Virus record (IMG/VR): IMGVR_UViG_3300047476_002078
Coordinates: 248,001 to 312,000 of that record
Length of the DNA stretch: 64,000 nucleotides
Direction: 5' to 3' (one strand)
Shown: in pieces, positions 50,039-59,985 of the stretch
Layout of the letters: the number at the start of each line of letters is the position of its first letter
Numbering within the stretch: the stretch's first letter is position 1
The notes under the pieces: generated by a model
Told to the model about the DNA's origin: nothing
What the model saw: only the letters and a program-made list of their open reading frames with translations
The model's database searches: none
Translations under genes and position numbers: made by a program

Positions 50039-51670
50039 ATGGCTTTTTTAAAATATGCAGATGCTATAGTAAGAAATCCTAATTTAGAGCCAAAAGCTTG
50101 GAACAATATGCGAGCCGCTGCAACGGCAGTCAGAGTTCCGGTTTCTTCCATACTTGAAGATTTTTCGCCAGACAAATATCTACTTACCCACGCTACAATT
50201 GTAGCTTCCGTAGATGTAGAAGATAATGATTATTATATAAAACCAGACTGCTCACAATACGTTAATCAAAATGGCGACTGTTGGGAAAGGCAGCTTTTGA
50301 TGGCTTCTTATCCAACATTTATTGGAGCTTATAATTATTTAGAGCATGTTCAAATTCCAGCTTTGTCAAAAGGCAGAATTATTGACGCTGTTGCTAGAAG
50401 TGTTTCAAATAACAATTCAGTTTATATAGATATTCTTGTAGCTACTGAAAGAAAGCACAGAGAATTAGTTGCATCAATTGAAGGTGGAAAAATTTCTACA
50501 CTTTCTATGGGGTGCTCAATCAAATATTCAATATGTTCCGCCTGCGGTAACAAAGCAGCCGATGAAACTGAATTATGTGACCATATAAGATATATGAAAA
50601 ATTCTTATTTCGTTGATGAAAACGGAGTAAAGAGGATAATTGCAGAACTTTGCGGTCATCGTGAAGAAAAAGATTCTAACGTGTTTATTGAAGCATCTTG
50701 GGTTGCTAATCCAGCCTTCAAGGGTGCTGTAATGAGAAATATTTTATTTCCAAAAGATTCTTTAGAAAGTGTAGAAGTAGCAAAGAAAATTGAAGCTTCT
50801 TACGTTCTTAAAAAAGTAGAAGAAAATAGTTTAGACGCTTATTTAAAAGCAGCTTCACTTCGTAAAGCAGTTGAAGACCCAATGGATTTCCCAAATAAAG
50901 ACGAAGAAGATTTAGTTAAACCAGAGCAAGCTCAACCAGAGCAAGCTCAACCAGAACAAGCTCAACCAGAGCAAGCTCAACCAGAACAAGCTCAACCAGA
51001 GCAAGCTCAACCAGAGCAAGCTCAACCAGAGCAAGCTCAACCAGAGCAAGCTCAACCAGAGCAAGCTCAACCAGAACAAGCTCAACCAGAGCAAGCTCAA
51101 CCAGAGCAAGCTCAACCAGAGCAAGCTCAACCAGAGCAAGCTCAACCAGAAGAAGATTCTTTTGATGGGGTTATAAATAAAGTTAAAAAAGAAATTCGCC
51201 AGCAAGTTATTGACGAACTGCAAAAAGAGTTGTCTGACTCGGTAACAACAAAAACACCGGATTTCTCAGATTCAGACAAAATGAATCAAGGTTGGAATAC
51301 TAACGATAATCTAGTGAAAGCTTTTATTGAGATATATCAACCCAAAACAGGATTTTCAAAAGCTAAATTAGCCTCAATTTTTAAAATGGTTGAAGCTTAT
51401 GAAAATAAGAAAGATATTGTTAAATTGGCTCACAGTTCTCGTGACCTTATAGATTTTTTTGAATTTGTAGATACTTTTCAATTAAATCCAAAAAGTCTCA
51501 AGAAAAGTCACTACAATATTCTTAGAAAAGCTTCTAGCGAAAATTTAAGTAGTTTTGATAGTTTTTTAAACTTTGTTGCAAGTAACGGTATTTCCGATAA
51601 TGCAGTAATTAACAGTATTTTAGCAAGGGCTAAGTTTATTCGTGAAAAATTTAAGGACGATAATCGCTGA
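50039..51670 (+). CDS. Prohead (capsid maturation) protease with Zn-ribbon insert and repeat linker
   Basis: NQNGD, LEH, LSMG, CSACGN...CDH, E.SWV.NPAF; located upstream of scaffold and capsid genes. Confidence 0.7.
   Translation: MAFLKYADAIVRNPNLEPKAWNNMRAAATAVRVPVSSILEDFSPDKYLLTHATIVASVDVEDNDYYIKPDCSQYVNQNGDCWERQLLMASYPTFIGAYNYLEHVQIPALSKGRIIDAVARSVSNNNSVYIDILVATERKHRELVASIEGGKISTLSMGCSIKYSICSACGNKAADETELCDHIRYMKNSYFVDENGVKRIIAELCGHREEKDSNVFIEASWVANPAFKGAVMRNILFPKDSLESVEVAKKIEASYVLKKVEENSLDAYLKAASLRKAVEDPMDFPNKDEEDLVKPEQAQPEQAQPEQAQPEQAQPEQAQPEQAQPEQAQPEQAQPEQAQPEQAQPEQAQPEQAQPEQAQPEQAQPEQAQPEEDSFDGVINKVKKEIRQQVIDELQKELSDSVTTKTPDFSDSDKMNQGWNTNDNLVKAFIEIYQPKTGFSKAKLASIFKMVEAYENKKDIVKLAHSSRDLIDFFEFVDTFQLNPKSLKKSHYNILRKASSENLSSFDSFLNFVASNGISDNAVINSILARAKFIREKFKDDNR
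50921..51145 (+). repeat. 15 x 15-bp tandem repeat encoding (PEQAQ)15
   Basis: ccagaRcaagctcaa; GAA variant in units 3, 5 and 11. Confidence 0.97.
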
Positions 51671-52192: not shown

Positions 52193-53500
52193 ATGAGAAA
52201 CAGACTTACAAGATTAAAGAAAGCAGACCCTTTCACACTAGGACGTGAAAAAGAGAATCCACCTGTTGAAAAATATACTAACGGGGACCCTGATTCATGG
52301 GCTGAGACTCCTTACGACAAAAAACATTGGGAAGACGATAAGCGTGAAGAAACTAACCACGCTGCCGAATCAGACCACAATTTCGGTGCTTCTGTAAAAG
52401 CTTCTGTAAAAGTTGCTCGTGAACTTCGTGAAAAAGCACTTAAATGCGTTCACATTGCTTCTGCTCTTTTCCCTACAGCTTCAGAAGAAACTCTTGAAGC
52501 TCAAGGATTTGACCTTATGGAACTTTCTGATCGTTCAATCGAAGCAACACTTAAACGTATTGCTGAAATGGAAGAAATGAAAGAAGACGAAGCTCAAGAA
52601 GAAGAACAAGAAGAAGTAATGAAAGAAGCTCGTTCTCTTCTCGCAAAAGTTCGTTCTTTAATTGCTGAAGCTGAAGAAGGAGAAAAAGAAGAAGCTCTTG
52701 AAGAAGATGAAGCTTGTGAAGACGAAGAAGAAATGAATCAAGCTGAAAAAGCTGCATCTGTTCTTGTTAAAAAAGCTTCGGCTCTTGTAGCTGCCGCTGA
52801 GTATGAAGAAGAAATTGGTGCTGAAGAAGAAGCTGAAGCTAAAAAAGAAGAAGCAAAGCAAATCCTTGCTAAGGCTAAAAAAATTCTTGCAGGAGAGCTT
52901 CCACCAGCACTTAAAGAAAATGCAGAAAAGATGAAAAAACTTCATGAAGAAGGTGCAGAAGTTGATAATTCTAAACTTAATACTGAAGGTCTTGAAGAAG
53001 CAGAAATGAGTCTTGAGGAAAAGAAAGAAGCTGCCCTTCGCCACTTAGCCGCTGCTAAAAAGCTTATGGCTGAAGTTGGAGTTGAAGATAAAGAAGAAGC
53101 TCACGAAGAAGAAGCACAATCTGAAGCTATGGAAGAAGAAGTAGAATCTGAAGAAGAAGCTATGGAAGAAGAAGTAGAATCTGAAGAAGAAGCTATGGAA
53201 GACGAAGAAGAACTTTCTATGGAAGAAGTTGACATGATTCCGTCTGAAAAAGACGAAGCTCTTGAAGACCTTTTCATGTCTCCTGATATGAAAGATGCTA
53301 AAGAAGCTTATGAAGACGCTTTCGGTGGGGAAGCTCACGAAGAGAAAGAAGAAAAACAAGCTTCTAAAACAGCTTCAAAGGCTCCTAAAAAAGGTGCTAA
53401 AACTCTGAAAGGTGGATTAAAAATTAGCTCTGTAAATAGTGCTGAAGATTTATCTAACTTGTGGGACTGCCCACCAGATGTTTCTCACCTATTTAAGTAA
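52193..53500 (+). CDS. Capsid scaffold protein
   Basis: Highly acidic and helical; GGAGG RBS; DLSNLW...PDVS.LF C-terminus; precedes decoration and capsid genes. Confidence 0.7.
   Translation: MRNRLTRLKKADPFTLGREKENPPVEKYTNGDPDSWAETPYDKKHWEDDKREETNHAAESDHNFGASVKASVKVARELREKALKCVHIASALFPTASEETLEAQGFDLMELSDRSIEATLKRIAEMEEMKEDEAQEEEQEEVMKEARSLLAKVRSLIAEAEEGEKEEALEEDEACEDEEEMNQAEKAASVLVKKASALVAAAEYEEEIGAEEEAEAKKEEAKQILAKAKKILAGELPPALKENAEKMKKLHEEGAEVDNSKLNTEGLEEAEMSLEEKKEAALRHLAAAKKLMAEVGVEDKEEAHEEEAQSEAMEEEVESEEEAMEEEVESEEEAMEDEEELSMEEVDMIPSEKDEALEDLFMSPDMKDAKEAYEDAFGGEAHEEKEEKQASKTASKAPKKGAKTLKGGLKISSVNSAEDLSNLWDCPPDVSHLFK
53123..53202 (+). repeat. 33-bp tandem repeat (EAMEEEVESEE, ~2.4 copies) in the scaffold gene
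   Basis: gaagctatggaagaagaagtagaatctgaagaa repeated. Confidence 0.85.
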
Positions 53501-54636: not shown

Positions 54637-55506
54637 ATGAAACCAGCAGATAACGCAACAAAACAAAAAGTAATCAGCGAACTGATTAAAACCGCCGCAG
54701 GCAGAGCAAAATTAGCTGCCTCTATGGTTCAACCTCTTCGCTTCCGTCGTGATTACACTTCAATTGGACGTAAAACATTCCTAGTTGAAGCTTTACCAGA
54801 TGGAGCACTTCCAATCTACGATAAAGACCCAAAGGCTACTGCCTACATTATCGGTGAAGAAGGTGAAAACATTCTTGCTATCCAAAAGCCTAAGCGTGTT
54901 ATTTTCCCTCTTTTCGAGATTGCTTCTAACCCAGAAATTCCTCTAACGCAGATCAAAGAGCGTCGCTTCGACCTAATCGAACGTGCTCAAGACCTTGCTA
55001 AAGCTGAAATTCAAGCTGAAGAAGATGGTCGTGTATTTGAAATCATGAACGCAATCGCAGGTGCGGCTACTGACGATGGTATCACTAACCCTGATATTCC
55101 AGTTGTAGCTCCTCTAACTGCTTCTGTTATGGCTGACTCTTTTGCAGACGTTGAGCGTCACGATCTTCGTGTTGCTAAAATTTTCGCAAACGCTAAAGAC
55201 TATACAGATATTCGTAAATGGGGTCGCGACGTTCTCGACATCGAAACTCAGCAAACATTACTTAAAACAGGTCTTCTTGCATACCTTTGGGGTGCTCAAA
55301 TTCTTGTTTCTCGTCGTGTTCCAGTAAACTACGTTTATACTTGCTGTGAAGCAGAAATGTTTGGACGTATTCCTGTAAGAACTGAACTTACTGTTCTTTC
55401 TGCGGATGATCCGAAAGCAAGAACTATCGGTTTCTCAATCTTTGAAAATATCGGAATTGGTGCTCATAACCCTGCCGGTCTTTCAAGACTTGTTCTTACT
55501 CGATAA
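54637..55506 (+). CDS. Major capsid protein (HK97 fold)
   Basis: GRAKLAASMVQPLR.RRDY..IGRKTFLVE.LPDGALPIYDKD, FEIASNP.I......RRFDLIERAQ, WGAQI.VSR; strong RBS, biased codons, followed by a terminator. Confidence 0.88.
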   Translation: MKPADNATKQKVISELIKTAAGRAKLAASMVQPLRFRRDYTSIGRKTFLVEALPDGALPIYDKDPKATAYIIGEEGENILAIQKPKRVIFPLFEIASNPEIPLTQIKERRFDLIERAQDLAKAEIQAEEDGRVFEIMNAIAGAATDDGITNPDIPVVAPLTASVMADSFADVERHDLRVAKIFANAKDYTDIRKWGRDVLDIETQQTLLKTGLLAYLWGAQILVSRRVPVNYVYTCCEAEMFGRIPVRTELTVLSADDPKARTIGFSIFENIGIGAHNPAGLSRLVLTR

Positions 55507-55529
55507 TCAATTTTTTTGTGAATCTAGTG

Positions 55530-55558
55530 AAGGGCGACCAGAAATGGTCGCCCTTTTT
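55530..55558 (+). terminator. Rho-independent terminator after the capsid gene (likely bidirectional)
   Basis: aagggcgacca-gaaa-tggtcgccctt + ttt. Confidence 0.9.
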
Positions 55559-57392
55559 ATTTTGTGATTTTAAATTTCCAATTTCCAGAATTCCATATTG
55601 AATAAATTCCTTTAGACGATAGAATTTGATCTGCGGTTAAATTGCTATTAAATGATTCTGGAAAAAATGATTTAATTTTATGTTTTTGAAATGCTTCTCT
55701 TGACCAACGTCTGCGAAAATTTGTGTAGAATAATCTCGGTCCTGTATCTTCTACTAACTCAAATCCGTTTTTAAAATACACTGTGTTTTCTGCTACTGGA
55801 GATAAGTCTCTATCGCAGTATGAAATTATTGTATGCCATTTAAGAGTCTTCATAGCGTGTTTTAAGAGCCTTGAAAAACCTCCTCTAACCGATGTTCCTA
55901 GTCGAGAAGAGAATCTACTGATCTCTAACCCTTCTGGATGATTACGAAAACTCATTGCACATTGTATTTCATCTTTTTCATCTACCAAAGCAAATTGAGC
56001 TATTGCTTGAGCCTTACCATAAACATGTGTTTCATCAAAAAACTTAGAACAATCTATTTCTTTTATTTTTAGTGATCTAGCATTTTTCTTATCTAATATT
56101 CCTAGCTCTGACTTAATAACTGATTGTATTTTTAAAAGACTCCAATCTTCCCAAAGATGAATTAACCTTATCCCTTCTTTGGTTGCGGATTGTGTCTTAT
56201 TTAAGTGATAATTTTTTTCAACGGGTTTACCCCATTGTAAAGAGTGGGTGCTGTGGTGATATAGGCTATCAATTTCAAAAGCTAATTTTTTACTTTCAAT
56301 ATAAATATCTATCTCAAACCATTTACCTGTTGATGTGTTTTTAATAACGTCTTTAGTATTACACTGAACATTGAATCCGAGAGACTCTATATATGAAGCT
56401 AATGCTATTTCAAGTTGTCCTCTTTTATTACCTACAAGCGGAAAGCATTTTCGACACCGTGGGGTCAAATAAAGGTCATCATAAAATTCTAACCCACAAT
56501 CTAAATGTTTTATTTTGTATTGTTTATATCCCTTAGTAAAACCGTCTTTGGTAAAGATTCCTTTGTATTCATCGAGTAGAGCATAATTAAAAAAATCAAG
56601 AGTTTTTAATACCTCTGCATATTTTTTATCAGTGATGGTAGCGACTCTTTTTTGTATAACTTCTTGATTTGAAAGAGGTGATTCACTTCCATACCGAACT
56701 TTATTAGTATTTTGAATTTTTGAACGAACTATATTTGAAGATGCTGCGTGAGCAGTTCCATATCTTTCAATATTTGTGTTTAATATTTTCTGTTTTACTT
56801 CAGGGTCTTGTTGAGCAAAATTAAAACCATAGCGACATAGGTTTGTCTCTTTTCTTTTTACAAGAGCCTCTTCAGATGTAGCAGAAACACTTTGAGAAAT
56901 TTTAACTCTTGAATCTACGAATTGAGCGACATTATCGACACAGTATTTTTCTTTTACTGTTATCTGAGTAGCTTTTTTAATTTCATCTGATTGTTGAGCG
57001 TACTCAACTCCATACAATTTCTTTGTAGTAGATCGCATTTTTTCGATTGCTAACTTTCTATTTTCTGATTCTTTGCGTAGCTCTAGGTTAAAAAGATTAA
57101 ATCTTTCTTTTATAGTATTAGGCTTGATACCAAGTTTAGAAGAAAGAGATTCAATACTTTCACCTGACTTATAATCATTATGGATATTTTCCCAGTATTC
57201 TTTATCATTTTTTGGGACAAGAGGTTTAAAAGAATTTCGAGGAAAGTAGTGGCTTTCAGAACTAAATCCTAAAGAACGCATACGGGAGTTAAAGGTTGCT
57301 TTTTTGTAACCTAATACAATCATAGCTTCTTCTTTGGAAATCTTTCCATGTGCATAATTAAGTAAGATTTGTGTTTCTTCAGGAGACATCAA
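55557..57392 (-). CDS. Hef-like homing endonuclease: HTH, T(N)..(R/K)YG repeats, PD-(D/E)XK domain and C-terminal Mom/GNAT-like domain
   Basis: TNIERYG-type repeats; EIDIYI..KKLAFEID..YHH; EISRF......VRGGFSRLL....IISYCDR....Y..NGF. Confidence 0.75.
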   Translation of the reverse strand: MMSPEETQILLNYAHGKISKEEAMIVLGYKKATFNSRMRSLGFSSESHYFPRNSFKPLVPKNDKEYWENIHNDYKSGESIESLSSKLGIKPNTIKERFNLFNLELRKESENRKLAIEKMRSTTKKLYGVEYAQQSDEIKKATQITVKEKYCVDNVAQFVDSRVKISQSVSATSEEALVKRKETNLCRYGFNFAQQDPEVKQKILNTNIERYGTAHAASSNIVRSKIQNTNKVRYGSESPLSNQEVIQKRVATITDKKYAEVLKTLDFFNYALLDEYKGIFTKDGFTKGYKQYKIKHLDCGLEFYDDLYLTPRCRKCFPLVGNKRGQLEIALASYIESLGFNVQCNTKDVIKNTSTGKWFEIDIYIESKKLAFEIDSLYHHSTHSLQWGKPVEKNYHLNKTQSATKEGIRLIHLWEDWSLLKIQSVIKSELGILDKKNARSLKIKEIDCSKFFDETHVYGKAQAIAQFALVDEKDEIQCAMSFRNHPEGLEISRFSSRLGTSVRGGFSRLLKHAMKTLKWHTIISYCDRDLSPVAENTVYFKNGFELVEDTGPRLFYTNFRRRWSREAFQKHKIKSFFPESFNSNLTADQILSSKGIYSIWNSGNWKFKITK

Positions 57393-57870
57393 GTCCTCCT
57401 TTAAGCTTTAGTAGAACCTCTTCAACAGTTAAATTTGGGTAATATTTTTCTTGAACGTATTTAAGCTTTTTAATATTTATATTTGTGGGCTTATTCTTAT
57501 AGTATGAATCATTTCTAAGTTGAGAAGACATACAACCACAGCTTTTAGTTGTTCCTTTAATAAGATACTGGCTCCTTACATCAACTACATTTCCGCAAAA
57601 ACATAAGCACGTCCAATAACCTCTACGAGATATTTTTTGTGTAGTTAAAAAACCAAATTTTTGATTCTCTTGAATTTTTCTTCGACCAGATAAAACTTTT
57701 TTTCTTAAACATCCGCAAGATTTTGTATTTTTTAACAAATATGTATTTTTTTCACAGATAGTTCCACAGTCACACATAACAAGCCAGTTACGGTTTTTCT
57801 TATCGTTTTCTAATTGGTCTATCACGACCATTGATCCAAACCTTTCTCCGATTAAACTTTTTCTTTTCAT
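57379..57870 (-). CDS. Protein of tandem HNH-associated Zn/DNA-binding repeats with no recognisable nuclease domain
   Basis: Two copies of (G).[RK]FG......W...C.CG.........TKSCGC. Confidence 0.65.
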   Translation of the reverse strand: MKRKSLIGERFGSMVVIDQLENDKKNRNWLVMCDCGTICEKNTYLLKNTKSCGCLRKKVLSGRRKIQENQKFGFLTTQKISRRGYWTCLCFCGNVVDVRSQYLIKGTTKSCGCMSSQLRNDSYYKNKPTNINIKKLKYVQEKYYPNLTVEEVLLKLKGGLDVS

Positions 57871-58691
57871 GATCTTTTAGGATAAGGTAAAGGTGTATAA
57901 TTTTTAAGGCTGTTTAATTTTAAAGACTCTTTTTTATTAGAGCCTAAAACAAGAATGTATTTTCCTTTAGGTGAGATTTGTATTTTTTCAGATTCTTTTA
58001 CGATAGAATTAATCCAATTTTTCCATGCTTTATTTACATCTTGTGGTATTTTAGAAAGGTCTTTAAAACCGTTTTCTTTTATCCAACTCGGTTCTATTTT
58101 GACATTATTCTCTTTCGCCCATTTTTTTAAAGTGGATGTTCGATAAAGAGACTGCTTTGAAAAAGGAGCACCTTTTTTAAATTTAGGATGAGTCAACATG
58201 TTTTTTGTTCCAAAATTACATCCTAGATAATCAAAATTGCAAGCTTGGTATATTGTTCCTATTTCATTGGCGGAAGAATCAGCATAAGCTACGAAAGCTC
58301 TTTTAGGTGTGGTTTTAACCATTTCTTTACATGAGAACATGATTAACCTGCTTCCGAGATTTTTTGGAGTCCATGAAGCACAAGCACCCCGCTGAATTAA
58401 GGCTTCATATTTTTTGGTATCTTTCCCCAAAACATTTGAATATGAGCTAGGTTCATTTATTAAAACCACTCCGCCGAGTAAATTGTTATACCTTGCTGTA
58501 AAAACCCATTTAGGTTTTGTTCCTATATTTCCTAACCATTCATAAGTTTTTATAAAATCTATAATTTCTGAATTTAATATTTCTTGCTTCAAAGAAAAGT
58601 CCGAAGCTTTTAAATTACTAGAGTCAAAATTTAGATTAACTAAATCAGCTTCTAACCTTTGCTCTCGGATAATTCTTTGATGGCATTTCAT
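57867..58691 (-). CDS. Mom-family (GNAT fold) DNA adenine-modifying enzyme
   Basis: FI..YEWLG, L.GVV, RGAC..W.PKN.GSRLI, VAYAD....EIGTIYQACNF.YLG. Confidence 0.75.
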   Translation of the reverse strand: MKCHQRIIREQRLEADLVNLNFDSSNLKASDFSLKQEILNSEIIDFIKTYEWLGNIGTKPKWVFTARYNNLLGGVVLINEPSSYSNVLGKDTKKYEALIQRGACASWTPKNLGSRLIMFSCKEMVKTTPKRAFVAYADSSANEIGTIYQACNFDYLGCNFGTKNMLTHPKFKKGAPFSKQSLYRTSTLKKWAKENNVKIEPSWIKENGFKDLSKIPQDVNKAWKNWINSIVKESEKIQISPKGKYILVLGSNKKESLKLNSLKNYTPLPYPKRS

Positions 58692-59590
58692 AGTAATTTA
58701 TATTTTAATGTTGGTATTATGTTTGGTTCAAGTATTTTACTAAGAATTAAGGCATTTATTCCTTGAAAATATATTCTTTTATTTCGAGTATAAGATTCAA
58801 TTTTCCACCGACTTTTGAACCACTTTATACAATTGTTTATATCTTCTTCAGAAAAACAATCTGTGCTTATTCCCAATAAATTTTCATTCTTGAAACCATC
58901 ATCTTGAAACCAAAAAGCTAAACCTCTGTCATCAAGACTATTAAGAACTTCTTCTGATACTATTTTTAATTTGTTTTTATAAAAAAGGCTGTGAATGTCA
59001 TTGAATATAGGATTTGTTTCTGTTCTAAAAGAAACACTTTGGTAGTTTTTGTTAGTTCTTTTGTCAAATCTTTCAAAAATTTTAGGAGGTTGTTGGACAA
59101 AGTTTTTAAGAATATTATATTTTAATTCCACATAGTCTTTTTGTTTTAAACCATGCTCTATTTTTAATCTACCTTTGTTTCTATGCAATTCAATACTAGC
59201 ATCACCCAACAAAGACCCTTTTATAAGCTGTTCCTGAATAGGGCTAATCCAATTAAGTAGTTCATTTTTTGAGTCTGAGATAACATCGCTTACTATTCGG
59301 AATCTAACTAAAGCTTTTTTTATAGCGTCAACATTGGTGTTTTTATTTGAAGCTATCTCTTCAATAGATTTATTGTTTTCTAAAAATTCTTTTATCAGAT
59401 AATGTTTTTGGAGAGACACTCCGTCTTGCCTTCTCAGAGTTATTTTTTCTTTTTTAAATATTTGATACAAAGTTGAAGTCGAAAGACCTACCTTGGAGGC
59501 TATTTCAGATACGGGAACGCCTTCAGAATACATTTTGATTATGGTTTCAAACATATTGAATTTACTAACATTACTATATTTTTGTGTCAA
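58688..59590 (-). CDS. LAGLIDADG homing endonuclease with N-terminal HTHs
   Basis: LIKGSLLGDASI and GLAFWFQDDG; ISTDCFS; N-terminal G..VSEIASKVGLS.STLY. Confidence 0.85.
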   Translation of the reverse strand: MTQKYSNVSKFNMFETIIKMYSEGVPVSEIASKVGLSTSTLYQIFKKEKITLRRQDGVSLQKHYLIKEFLENNKSIEEIASNKNTNVDAIKKALVRFRIVSDVISDSKNELLNWISPIQEQLIKGSLLGDASIELHRNKGRLKIEHGLKQKDYVELKYNILKNFVQQPPKIFERFDKRTNKNYQSVSFRTETNPIFNDIHSLFYKNKLKIVSEEVLNSLDDRGLAFWFQDDGFKNENLLGISTDCFSEEDINNCIKWFKSRWKIESYTRNKRIYFQGINALILSKILEPNIIPTLKYKLL

Positions 59591-59643: not shown

Positions 59644-59985
59644 GTGAATCTTTTACATAAGGTAATCATGGACGATCTGCTTAAAGATTTTCAAGGAGGG
59701 GAATGGCGACCAAAGAATTTGGTTCAGCCTGCCTTGGCTAAAGCTTTGTTGTCGGAAATGTCAAAACTGAAAAAAACAGTAGATGTTTTAGAGAATCAAG
59801 ACTTGCCGAGTATTAAAAAGATGTTAGCTCGTCTTAATATGTATTTGGCGAAAGCGAATCAAGTTAAGTCGATAAACCATGTAGATTACTTAGTATTTAT
59901 TGCAAATGCGTTGATAGATATACAAGAAATTGTTGGATGGTATCAAAGAAATAAACAAATCCTTAAAGGGGGAAAAAATGGCTAA
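59644..59985 (+). CDS. Hypothetical protein
   Basis: Helical ORF resuming the plus-strand late genes. Confidence 0.5.
   Translation: MNLLHKVIMDDLLKDFQGGEWRPKNLVQPALAKALLSEMSKLKKTVDVLENQDLPSIKKMLARLNMYLAKANQVKSINHVDYLVFIANALIDIQEIVGWYQRNKQILKGGKNG

What the first reader, a model, noticed from the sequence alone, without database searches (positions are those of the whole stretch)
55557..59590. Antisense operon coupling two endonucleases with two Mom/GNAT domains: candidate restriction-modification-like or selfish exclusion cassette
Seen: four overlapping genes (ATGA overlaps at 58688 and 57867) in the order HTH-LAGLIDADG, stand-alone Mom-like enzyme, nuclease-less Zn-repeat DNA binder, and Hef-like PD-(D/E)XK nuclease fused to a second GNAT-like domain. 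The block sits exactly behind the capsid terminator. Established: Mu Mom modifies adenines and blocks restriction, and free-standing homing endonucleases often sit beside conserved target genes. Inference: a cut-and-protect module that marks self DNA and cleaves unmodified rival phage or host DNA, or a co-homing unit targeting the capsid locus.
Basis: partly seen in the sequence, partly recalled or inferred. Interest (0 to 1): 0.7.

Follow-up and report, generated by a model that had tools for sequence, protein, structure and literature searches.

The report
Nuclease-plus-Mom selfish gene island behind capsid gene
Behind the capsid gene of a 356-kb freshwater jumbo phage sit two separate selfish DNA-cutting genes, each paired with or fused to a Mom-type DNA-modifying domain; this pairing recurs widely in phages and suggests, but does not prove, a cut-others, protect-self logic.

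Summary
There are four overlapping minus-strand genes directly behind the capsid-gene terminator:
- an HTH plus I-SceI-type LAGLIDADG nuclease
- a stand-alone Mom-family GNAT
- a nuclease-less two-repeat zinc DNA binder
- a Hef-type (EDxHD/Vsr-like) nuclease whose C-terminal 170 residues are a second Mom-like GNAT

The four genes are not one obligate unit. Close relatives carry different subsets and orders. A 95%-identical strain, and contigs from two further metagenome runs, carry an 829-834 bp internal deletion of the LAGLIDADG gene. Hef is absent from other relatives.

The units that recur are two:
- the translationally coupled LAGLIDADG-to-Mom pair, found in both orientations behind the capsid gene and fused into one protein in two contigs
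- the self-contained Hef-Mom fusion

About half of the best 150 representatives of this Mom subfamily are C-terminal domains of longer proteins. Recognisable partners are EDxHD, LAGLIDADG, HNH and other nucleases. More distant relatives carry LAGLIDADG fused to an amino-methyltransferase at the same locus.

The best reading is a homing-endonuclease island made of nuclease-plus-modifier modules with restriction-modification-like self-immunity. That logic was already predicted for REase-Mom fusions in jumbo phages (Iyer et al. 2021). I found no description of the LAGLIDADG versions in the literature I searched. No activity has been shown.

The parts
55529..55556 (+). Intrinsic terminator of the major capsid gene (54637-55506). 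The o611 stop codon abuts it, so the two converging transcription units end here.
   Evidence: capsid identity (38% to phage G major head protein, 52% to Tunturi_5 major head protein)
55557..57389 (-). o611: Hef-type homing-endonuclease-like protein (610 aa from ATG 57389). Order of domains: HTH regions, DUF7487 helical repeats, small beta/zinc element, EDxHD/Vsr-like nuclease, Mom-like GNAT.
56592..57071 (-). o611 residues about 107-266: DUF7487 helical repeats, the presumed DNA-binding array
   Evidence: Pfam DUF7487 61.9 bits; helices in the AF2 model
56100..56417 (-). o611 residues about 325-430: EDxHD/Vsr-like nuclease domain. E359, D361, E372, H379, H395 and K398 are invariant or nearly so in the family.
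   Evidence: family profile vs 3r3p_A (I-Bth0305I), E 9.1e-7; conservation; active-site mapping from PMC3239194
55560..56081 (-). o611 residues 437-610: Mom-like GNAT domain
   Evidence: Foldseek top hit 8bv8, E 1.1e-4; GNAT Z about 12, and Mom Z 11.2 over 152 residues; hhalign to Mu Mom E 1.9e-4 and to the o274 family E 2.8e-5; 7 homologues carry a precomputed PF25680 hit
57379..57870 (-). o163: two zinc-binding repeats of about 65 aa, of the kind found in HNH homing endonucleases, with no nuclease domain
   Evidence: phrog_374 positions 192-260 of 617 only; the paralogue at genome 101903-102706 has the same repeats plus an HNH/EndoVII-type C-terminus; dN/dS 0.07 against L015
57867..58691 (-). 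o274: stand-alone Mom-family GNAT. Equivalents of Mu R111, S124, D149 and Y159 are invariant in the family. The R151 equivalent is absent.
   Evidence: residue roles from PMC13219725
58688..59590 (-). o300: HTH plus I-SceI-type (two-motif, monomeric) LAGLIDADG endonuclease. The likely start is ATG 59554. The nuclease domain lies at about 58691-59230.
58724..59552 (.). Segment missing in the 95%-identical strain L015 and in contigs from a lake and a subsurface metagenome run. It is an internal deletion of the LAGLIDADG gene that leaves its first and last roughly 30-38 nt.
   Evidence: joint 58718>59553 in runs X5 and X10, with both alleles present in X5
59665..59694 (-). Weak sigma-70-like promoter match upstream of o300; only a candidate for the block's promoter
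   Evidence: 9 of 12 matches; the total number of promoter-like sites is not above the shuffled expectation

Best explanation
The block is a homing-endonuclease island in the variable slot just downstream of the major capsid gene of a phage-G-like freshwater jumbo phage. It holds two independent selfish modules, each joining a site-specific nuclease to a Mom-type GNAT. It also holds a nuclease-less DNA binder derived from an HNH homing endonuclease.

Module 1 is an I-SceI-type LAGLIDADG nuclease translationally coupled to a separate Mom enzyme. Module 2 is a Hef-type protein in which one DNA-binding array carries both an EDxHD/Vsr-like nuclease and a Mom-like domain.

Proposed mechanism: the Mom domain adds an acyl adduct to adenine N6 at or near the nuclease's target in the carrier genome, and that mark is carried in the packaged DNA. 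The nuclease therefore spares its own genome and cuts the unmodified homologous site of co-infecting relatives or other incoming DNA. Repair from the carrier copies the module (homing) or excludes the rival's markers.

Shown here: domain identities, retention of catalytic residues, purifying selection, recurrent pairing and fusion, and independent gain and loss of the modules. Inferred: enzymatic activity, target location near the capsid gene, and the protective role of the modification.
For: Identity of the parts.

Catalytic residues are kept:
- LAGLIDADG: G113, D118 and D218-D219-G220 are invariant.
- Nuclease: D361 and E372 invariant, H379 nearly so, mapped onto the I-Bth0305I active site.
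- Mom: R101, S114, D138 and Y148 invariant in o274, aligned to Mu R111, S124, D149 and Y159. Hef has R492 and Y538 plus the S and D equivalents.

Selection: dN/dS is 0.12 (Hef), 0.07 (o163) and 0.11 (Mom) against strain L015, similar to the structural genes.

Linkage:
- The LAGLIDADG-to-Mom pair with a 4-bp overlap occurs in the window, in L011 and in L174. In L174 it is inverted yet again directly after the capsid gene.
- The pair is fused into one ORF in L032 and in the unrelated L104.
- 28 of 67 unique viral-contig homologues are fusions, 17 of them with DUF7487 and an EDxHD domain.
- 68 of the best 150 representatives are 400 aa or longer with Mom at the C-terminus. Partners include EDxHD, LAGLIDADG, HNH, TnsA-like and MTES_1575.

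Parallel: relatives with 69-76% capsid identity carry HTH-LAGLIDADG fused to an amino-methyltransferase (motifs DPCxGxGG and TSPPY) in the same slot. Of 23 ORFs scanned, 16 have LAGLIDADG_2 and 11 have N6_N4_Mtase.

Independence of the modules.

Literature: Hef of phage U5 cleaves nrdB (PMC2988022). Hef-type proteins belong to the EDxHD family (PMC3239194). HEGs cluster by capsid genes (PMC10448857). REase-Mom fusions in jumbo phages were predicted to work as restriction plus self-protection (PMC7824862).
Against: - No modification, cleavage or target site has been observed.
- The o274 family lacks the equivalent of Mu R151, which is essential in Mu Mom, so its chemistry or donor may differ.
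- 39 of 67 unique homologues stand alone, and their 71 immediate neighbours show no recurrent homing-endonuclease family (only 25 of 36 families were listed). Protection of a linked nuclease cannot be Mom's only role.
- Mom is better conserved than either nuclease (56-96% against 38-57%) and survives loss of the LAGLIDADG gene. That also fits a general anti-restriction role.
- In a mixed infection a diffusible Mom would modify rival DNA too, so discrimination would have to rest on marks already present in the packaged DNA.
- The complex prediction for o300 with o274 gave no answer.
Confidence: 0.5

Rival explanations
1. Mom is ordinary anti-restriction cargo, as in phage Mu. It modifies phage DNA broadly against host restriction enzymes. 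The nucleases are unrelated selfish homing genes that share a hot spot or spread the useful gene by co-conversion. Fusions exist for co-expression and co-mobility, not for immunity to the linked nuclease.
For: - Stand-alone homologues sit among replication and repair genes with no recurrent nuclease family among the neighbours listed.
- Mom is kept under purifying selection where the LAGLIDADG gene is deleted.
- Mom is more conserved than the nucleases.
- Mu Mom protects against more than 20 restriction enzymes (PMC7261163).
Against: - Cargo need not be fused, yet about half of the subfamily is fused to nucleases or HEG-type DNA-binding arrays of several folds.
- The same slot holds LAGLIDADG fused to a methyltransferase in relatives, which points to a nuclease-specific need for a modifier.
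- In Hef-type proteins a long sequence-specific DNA-binding array would restrict a fused Mom to few sites, which suits general anti-restriction poorly (inference).
Confidence: 0.27
2. The Mom-like domains are no longer enzymes. They serve as DNA-binding, dimerisation or regulatory modules of homing endonucleases, and o274 is a leftover of a decayed fusion.
For: - GNAT folds are reused for non-catalytic roles (general knowledge).
- The o274 family lacks the R151 equivalent.
- Mu Mom has an HTH-like insertion and a DNA-binding cleft.
Against: Equivalents of four residues needed for Mu Mom activity are invariant across 51 sequences at 39-69% identity, and again across 68 fusion proteins. dN/dS is 0.11.
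Confidence: 0.1
3. One reading: one four-gene operon acting as an obligate cut-and-protect cassette, in which every part needs the others.
For: Stop/start overlaps, a single orientation and a single terminator in this genome.
Against: Six related genomes show six different compositions or orders. LAGLIDADG or Hef can each be missing, and o163 moves from one end to the middle of the block. Deletion alleles coexist with the full allele in nature.
Confidence: 0.05

Closest known systems
REase-fold nuclease fused to a Mom domain in jumbo phages (Iyer, Anantharaman, Krishnan, Burroughs, Aravind 2021, PMC7824862)
   Same: o611 has this architecture. The paper already predicts that momylation protects the phage while the fused nuclease attacks host or superinfecting DNA.
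   Different: In the passages I searched, the paper does not mention homing or LAGLIDADG. Here the same logic appears with an I-SceI-type LAGLIDADG as a separate, translationally coupled gene, with population-level gain and loss, and with a methyltransferase counterpart at the same locus.
Hef / EDxHD homing endonucleases (phage U5 Hef; I-Bth0305I, PDB 3r3p)
   Same: Vsr-like nuclease core with conserved acidic and His residues, an N-terminal DNA-binding array, free-standing genes beside essential phage genes, and several copies per jumbo genome.
   Different: I-Bth0305I is intron-encoded, uses NUMOD/HTH modules and has no GNAT domain. The Mom-like C-terminus of Hef-type proteins is not discussed in the HEG papers I could read.
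Phage Mu Mom (PDB 8bv8), a Gly-tRNA-dependent N6-carbamoylmethyl-adenine transferase
   Same: GNAT fold with an extra C-terminal insertion. Motif GxxYQAxNFxYxG. Equivalents of R111, S124, D149 and Y159 are present.
   Different: About 13% identity over the structural alignment. There is no R151 equivalent in o274, and E-W replaces H58-Y59. The donor, product and sequence context are unknown. The genes lie next to nucleases rather than a Com-type regulator.
I-SceI-type LAGLIDADG homing endonucleases
   Same: The o300 family profile matches I-SceI over its whole length (E 7.5e-44), with both LAGLIDADG motifs and the C-terminal YK motif.
   Different: o300 is free-standing rather than intron-encoded. 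It has N-terminal HTH domains and is coupled or fused to a DNA-modifying domain.
HEG islands next to capsid, terminase and RNR genes (Barth, Nguyen, Seed 2023, PMC10448857)
   Same: Several nuclease genes and nuclease-less HEG-derived DNA binders cluster beside an essential structural gene, with domain shuffling.
   Different: That work centres on T5orf172 and HNH families. Mom or methyltransferase partners are not part of it (no 'Mom' in the text).
Type IIG/IIC restriction-modification enzymes (own knowledge)
   Same: One polypeptide, or one tight pair, carries both cleavage and base modification, guided by shared DNA recognition.
   Different: The modifier here is a GNAT acyltransferase rather than a SAM methyltransferase. 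The nucleases are homing-type with presumably long targets, and the elements behave as mobile genes inside phage genomes.

Membership tests
Mom family (PF25680; Mu Mom) | Sequence match above Pfam's gathering score | tested here: met
   o274: 42.1 bits against 27.1. o611 itself has no Pfam hit, but 7 of 104 homologues do, and hhalign of its family to Mu Mom gives E 1.9e-4.
Mom family (PF25680; Mu Mom) | GNAT fold with Mom as the nearest solved structure | tested here: met
   o274 model: 8bv8 is the top hit, E 4.8e-9, TM 0.64 by target. o611 model: 8bv8 is the top hit, E 1.1e-4, and Z 11.2 over 152 residues.
Mom family (PF25680; Mu Mom) | Residues required for Mu Mom activity (R111, S124, D149, R151, Y159) | tested here: inconclusive
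   o274 family: four of five are invariant, and the R151 position is variable. Hef family: R, S, D and Y are present, with an Arg one position off R151. Residue roles come from PMC13219725.
Mom family (PF25680; Mu Mom) | Post-replicative N6-adenine acylation of DNA using Gly-tRNA(Gly) | not testable with these tools
   Needs LC-MS or SMRT data on modified DNA.
EDxHD / Vsr-like homing endonucleases (Hef type) | Vsr-like nuclease domain with a conserved catalytic Asp and His | tested here: met
   Family profile against 3r3p_A, E 9.1e-7, with D361 aligned to D196 of I-Bth0305I. phrog_3339, E 3e-79.
EDxHD / Vsr-like homing endonucleases (Hef type) | Mobility: present or absent at one locus among related genomes | tested here: met
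   Present in the window, L015, L008, L011 and L175. Absent from L016, L174 and L032 at the same capsid-proximal slot. Homing itself has not been shown.
LAGLIDADG homing endonucleases (I-SceI type) | Two LAGLIDADG motifs with catalytic acidic residues in one chain | tested here: met
   LAGLIDADG_2 at 112 bits. Profile against I-SceI, E 7.5e-44. G113, D118 and D218-D219-G220 invariant.
LAGLIDADG homing endonucleases (I-SceI type) | Selfish life cycle (gain, decay, loss) | tested here: met
   Internal 829-834 bp deletion in L015 and in contigs from two metagenome runs. It leaves the coding remnant of the conserved C-terminal motif, and the full and deleted alleles coexist in one lake sample.
Restriction-modification-like system | Nuclease and modifier genetically linked beyond chance | tested here: met
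   Conserved pair, fusions to several nuclease folds, and a methyltransferase analogue at the same locus.
Restriction-modification-like system | Modification blocks cleavage by the cognate nuclease, and the nuclease is harmful without the modifier | not testable with these tools
   No biochemical or genetic data. The only relevant point is that no relative in this clade has the LAGLIDADG gene without a Mom gene nearby. A more distant LAGLIDADG homologue (P0229) has none on its 8.9-kb contig.

The most novel reading that the evidence does not exclude
Self-immunising homing endonucleases form a general class. Homing nucleases of at least three folds (LAGLIDADG, EDxHD/Vsr-like, HNH) carry their own base-modifying immunity domain, either a Mom-type GNAT or an amino-methyltransferase. 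This lets them target sequences that are also present and invariant in their own genome, such as the capsid locus. The class would bridge homing endonucleases and restriction-modification systems, and stand-alone phage Mom genes would be the 'orphan' survivors of decayed modules.
Probability: 0.35. Interest if true: 0.8.

Novelty: new variant of a known kind. Interest (0 to 1): 0.55.

Why it matters
It is not generally known how free-standing homing endonucleases avoid cutting their own genome. If the Mom domains, or the methyltransferase domains in relatives, provide that immunity, three things follow:
- Many phage genes annotated simply as 'homing endonuclease' or 'Mom-like protein' are two halves of one competition device.
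- DNA hypermodification would act in phage-against-phage conflict as well as against host restriction.
- LAGLIDADG enzymes would join the nuclease folds used in restriction-modification-like systems.

The locus offers compact pairs, natural deletion alleles and fused forms for a direct test. If the enzymes prove active, they could also supply new site-directed adenine-modifying enzymes.

Tried and rejected
- Megablast of the region against GenBank phages found nothing. Relatives had to be reached through the capsid protein.
- BLASTP of o611 against o274 was not significant. The link needed profile and structure comparison.
- My HMM of the Hef-type Mom domain does not detect the o274-type domain, so these are two diverged subfamilies.
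- Complex prediction for o300 with o274 gave 'no answer' (score 0.00). It counts neither for nor against binding.
- Neighbour analysis of stand-alone Mom genes: I expected nucleases and found none among the families listed. This weakens any claim of obligate coupling.
- Pfam does not recognise the HNH part of the o163 paralogue. PHROGs does.
- My dN/dS for the gene at 59644-59985 used a start one base off and is invalid.
- Two papers (PMC2995806, PMC1275590) are not held, so the original Mom-fusion and Hef descriptions were read only at second hand.
- I considered an intein or in-frame HEG insertion as the origin of the LAGLIDADG-methyltransferase ORFs. I rejected an intein because the LAGLIDADG domain is N-terminal and not flanked by methyltransferase halves.
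- The 544-bp perfectly identical tract at the capsid gene's 3' end could be a co-conversion tract, but it does not include the 95%-identical Hef gene. It stays unexplained.

Full report
OBSERVATION

The window is bases 248001-312000 of a complete 355,874-bp IMG/VR phage genome with direct terminal repeats. Its major capsid protein (54637-55506, + strand) is 75% identical to that of the 485-kb uncultured phage LR745208.1, 52% to Tunturiibacter phage Tunturi_5 and 38% to Bacillus phage G gp27. This is therefore a phage-G-like jumbo phage. Public runs that hold the region are freshwater, lake, wastewater and subsurface metagenomes.

The ATGA stop/start overlaps at 58688-58691 and 57867-57870 are real. 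An 11-nt overlap with an AGGAGG site precedes the last gene.

WHAT THE GENES ARE

- o300 (58688-59554/59590) has N-terminal HTH domains and a LAGLIDADG_2 domain (112 bits). A profile of its family matches I-SceI end to end (E 7.5e-44). Both motif aspartates are invariant. It is a complete, monomeric, I-SceI-type enzyme.
- o274 (57867-58691) passes Pfam's Mom threshold (42.1 against 27.1 bits). Its AF2 model (pLDDT 94.4) has Mu Mom (8bv8) as best PDB match (E 4.8e-9), ahead of ordinary GNATs. In 51 family members at 39-69% identity, the equivalents of Mu R111, S124, D149 and Y159 are invariant. The R151 position is not conserved. These residues are needed for Mu Mom activity, which uses Gly-tRNA(Gly) as donor (PMC13219725).
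- o163 (57379-57870) consists of two zinc-binding repeats that match only the DNA-binding part of an HNH-endonuclease PHROG. A paralogue elsewhere in the genome (101903-102706) has the same repeats plus an HNH/EndoVII-type C-terminus.
- o611 (55557-57389) matches the PHROG 'homing endonuclease' family 3339 over its length (E 3e-79) and the Hef-annotated genes of Campylobacter, Dickeya, Klebsiella and other large phages. Its family profile hits the catalytic domain of I-Bth0305I, prototype of the EDxHD/Vsr-like homing endonucleases (E 9e-7). The catalytic Asp is aligned, and Hef-type proteins were assigned to that family by Taylor et al. (PMC3239194). Residues 437-610 form a GNAT fold (Z about 12) with Mu Mom as the top Foldseek hit. 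Profile comparison links this domain to Mu Mom and to the o274 family.

THE BLOCK IS NOT ONE UNIT

I fetched 80 loci around capsid homologues and several contigs encoding close homologues of the four proteins. All relatives with at least 81% capsid identity that reach past the capsid gene carry some of these genes in the same slot, but never the same set. Listed in transcription order:

- window: LAGLIDADG, Mom, o163, Hef
- L015: (LAGLIDADG remnant), Mom, o163, Hef
- L011: o163-like, LAGLIDADG, Mom, Hef
- L008/L175: o163-like, two other ORFs, Mom, a short ORF and two opposite-strand genes, then LAGLIDADG, Hef
- L016: o163-like, Mom, LAGLIDADG, with no Hef
- L174: LAGLIDADG, Mom, inverted so as to run with the capsid gene, with no Hef
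- L032: a single 715-aa HTH-LAGLIDADG-Mom fusion preceded by a second LAGLIDADG ORF

L015 is about 95% identical in DNA to the window. It lacks window bases 58724-59552 and keeps the first 38 nt and last roughly 30 nt of o300. That remnant includes the coding sequence for the conserved C-terminal motif, so the difference is a deletion rather than an empty site.

The same junction appears in contigs of a lake and a subsurface metagenome run. In the lake run the full and deleted alleles coexist at similar depth.

Between the window and L015 the three remaining genes have dN/dS of 0.07-0.12, like the structural genes. The genome holds only one LAGLIDADG, one Hef and 2-3 HNH genes in 356 kb, so the clustering is not chance.

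THE NUCLEASE-MOM LINK IS GENERAL

- The LAGLIDADG-to-Mom pair with its 4-bp overlap persists at 38-51% (nuclease) and 56-67% (Mom) identity. It occurs in both orientations and is fused in L032 and in the unrelated contig L104.
- In IMG/VR, 518 stretches encode o274 relatives. Of 67 unique ones among the best 80, 28 are C-terminal domains of longer proteins. Seventeen of those have DUF7487, and they also contain the EDxHD nuclease domain.
- An exhaustive profile search finds 1,769 cluster representatives. Of the best 150, 68 are 400 aa or longer with Mom at the C-terminus. Recognisable partners are EDxHD (16), DUF7487 (12), LAGLIDADG (2-3), HNH (2-3), TnsA-like, MTES_1575 and CapR-type domains.
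- About 45 N-terminal regions are unassigned. One gives an Atlas lead to divergent HNH (a lead only).
- Against obligate coupling, the 39 stand-alone genes have neighbours such as RNA ligase, RecA, gyrase B and methylases, and no homing endonuclease family recurs among the families listed (25 of 36 were shown).

A PARALLEL AT THE SAME LOCUS

In relatives with 69-76% capsid identity, the ORF right after the capsid gene is a 550-1229-aa protein with HTH, an I-SceI-type LAGLIDADG domain and an amino-methyltransferase. Of 23 ORFs scanned, 16 have LAGLIDADG_2 and 11 have N6_N4_Mtase. The consensus shows the motifs DPCxGxGG and TSPPY. PDB hits are I-SceI and a modification methylase. The window genome itself has no N6_N4_Mtase match. 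The same nuclease type in the same slot is therefore joined to a different modifier of exocyclic amino groups.

MECHANISM

Best reading (confidence about 0.5): two independent selfish modules, each a homing-type nuclease with a linked adenine-modifying domain that marks the carrier's own copy of the target. This is restriction-modification logic. Unmodified homologous DNA of co-infecting relatives is cut and repaired from the carrier.

Fusion to one DNA-binding array, as in Hef, would make protection and cleavage share specificity automatically. That would also explain why several such genes with different arrays can coexist in one jumbo genome, for example 9 places in LR756500.1 (inference). 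Stand-alone Mom genes would then be the analogue of orphan methyltransferases left after nuclease decay, as seen happening in L015.

- Shown: architecture, conserved catalytic residues, selection, linkage and independent turnover.
- Inferred: activity, target, and protection.

Main rival (about 0.27): Mom is general anti-restriction cargo that homing genes merely accompany or spread.

Minor rivals: the Mom domains are non-catalytic (0.1), or the block is an obligate four-gene operon (0.05, contradicted by the comparative data).

COMPARISON AND NOVELTY

The Hef-Mom architecture and its restriction-plus-protection reading were published as a prediction for jumbo phages (PMC7824862). HEG islands beside capsid genes are also known (PMC10448857).

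In the literature available to me I did not find:
- the I-SceI-type LAGLIDADG partnered with or fused to Mom
- the LAGLIDADG-methyltransferase counterpart at the same locus
- the natural deletion polymorphism

I therefore rate it a new variant of a known kind, of moderate interest. It is a good experimental entry point rather than a new principle.

LIMITS

There are no biochemical data. Gene calls in relatives are my own crude ORF calls. Fusion counts depend on Pfam and home-made HMMs. Metagenome contigs show presence, not absence.

Noticed in passing
L001:10080-13769; L021:11064-13754; L027:10892-13723; L047:11042-12943 (relatives, ORF directly after the capsid gene): Large proteins combine HTH, an I-SceI-type LAGLIDADG domain, an amino-methyltransferase (motifs DPCxGxGG and TSPPY) and often a CGNR zinc finger. 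L019 has ParB_N instead. I found no description of a LAGLIDADG-methyltransferase fusion in the papers searched.
   Followed up: partly
window 54973-55516: A 544-bp stretch at the 3' end of the capsid gene is exactly identical between the window and strain L015, against a background of about 95% identity. It ends just before the terminator and does not include the adjacent Hef gene. It may be a recent recombination or conversion patch.
   Followed up: partly
genome 101903-102706 (outside the window; L176:904-1707): A 267-aa free-standing endonuclease gene has the same two zinc repeats as o163 plus an HNH/EndoVII-type C-terminus. It sits between unrelated genes.
   Followed up: partly
genome 56522-56597 (outside the window): The phage encodes five tRNAs, one of them tRNA-Gly(UCC). 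Mu Mom uses Gly-tRNA(Gly) as its acyl donor, so this may be relevant or may only reflect AT-rich codon usage.
   Followed up: no
window 52193-53500: A very acidic, repeat-rich 435-aa protein (Glu/Ala repeats, scaffold-like) lies upstream of the decoration and capsid genes. Its repeat region is the most divergent part between the window and L015 (86-89% identity).
   Followed up: no
window 50919-51155: This part of the 543-aa gene at 50039-51670 aligns to L015 at several offsets 15 bases apart. That indicates a 15-bp (5-codon) tandem repeat array whose copy number may differ between strains.
   Followed up: no
L032:10971-13445 and L032:13449-15596: Two consecutive LAGLIDADG ORFs follow the capsid gene in this relative. 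The first has an HNH-associated repeat, and the second is the HTH-LAGLIDADG-Mom fusion.
   Followed up: partly
L019:12636-13460; L047:12945-13769: A 274-aa ORF with no Pfam or PHROG match directly follows the LAGLIDADG-containing ORF in several relatives. It has the same length as o274 but no detectable similarity to it.
   Followed up: partly
window 59644-59985: The ORF after the block more likely starts at ATG 59668 than at GTG 59644. That leaves about 75-110 bp of AT-rich divergent intergenic DNA for the block's promoter.
   Followed up: no
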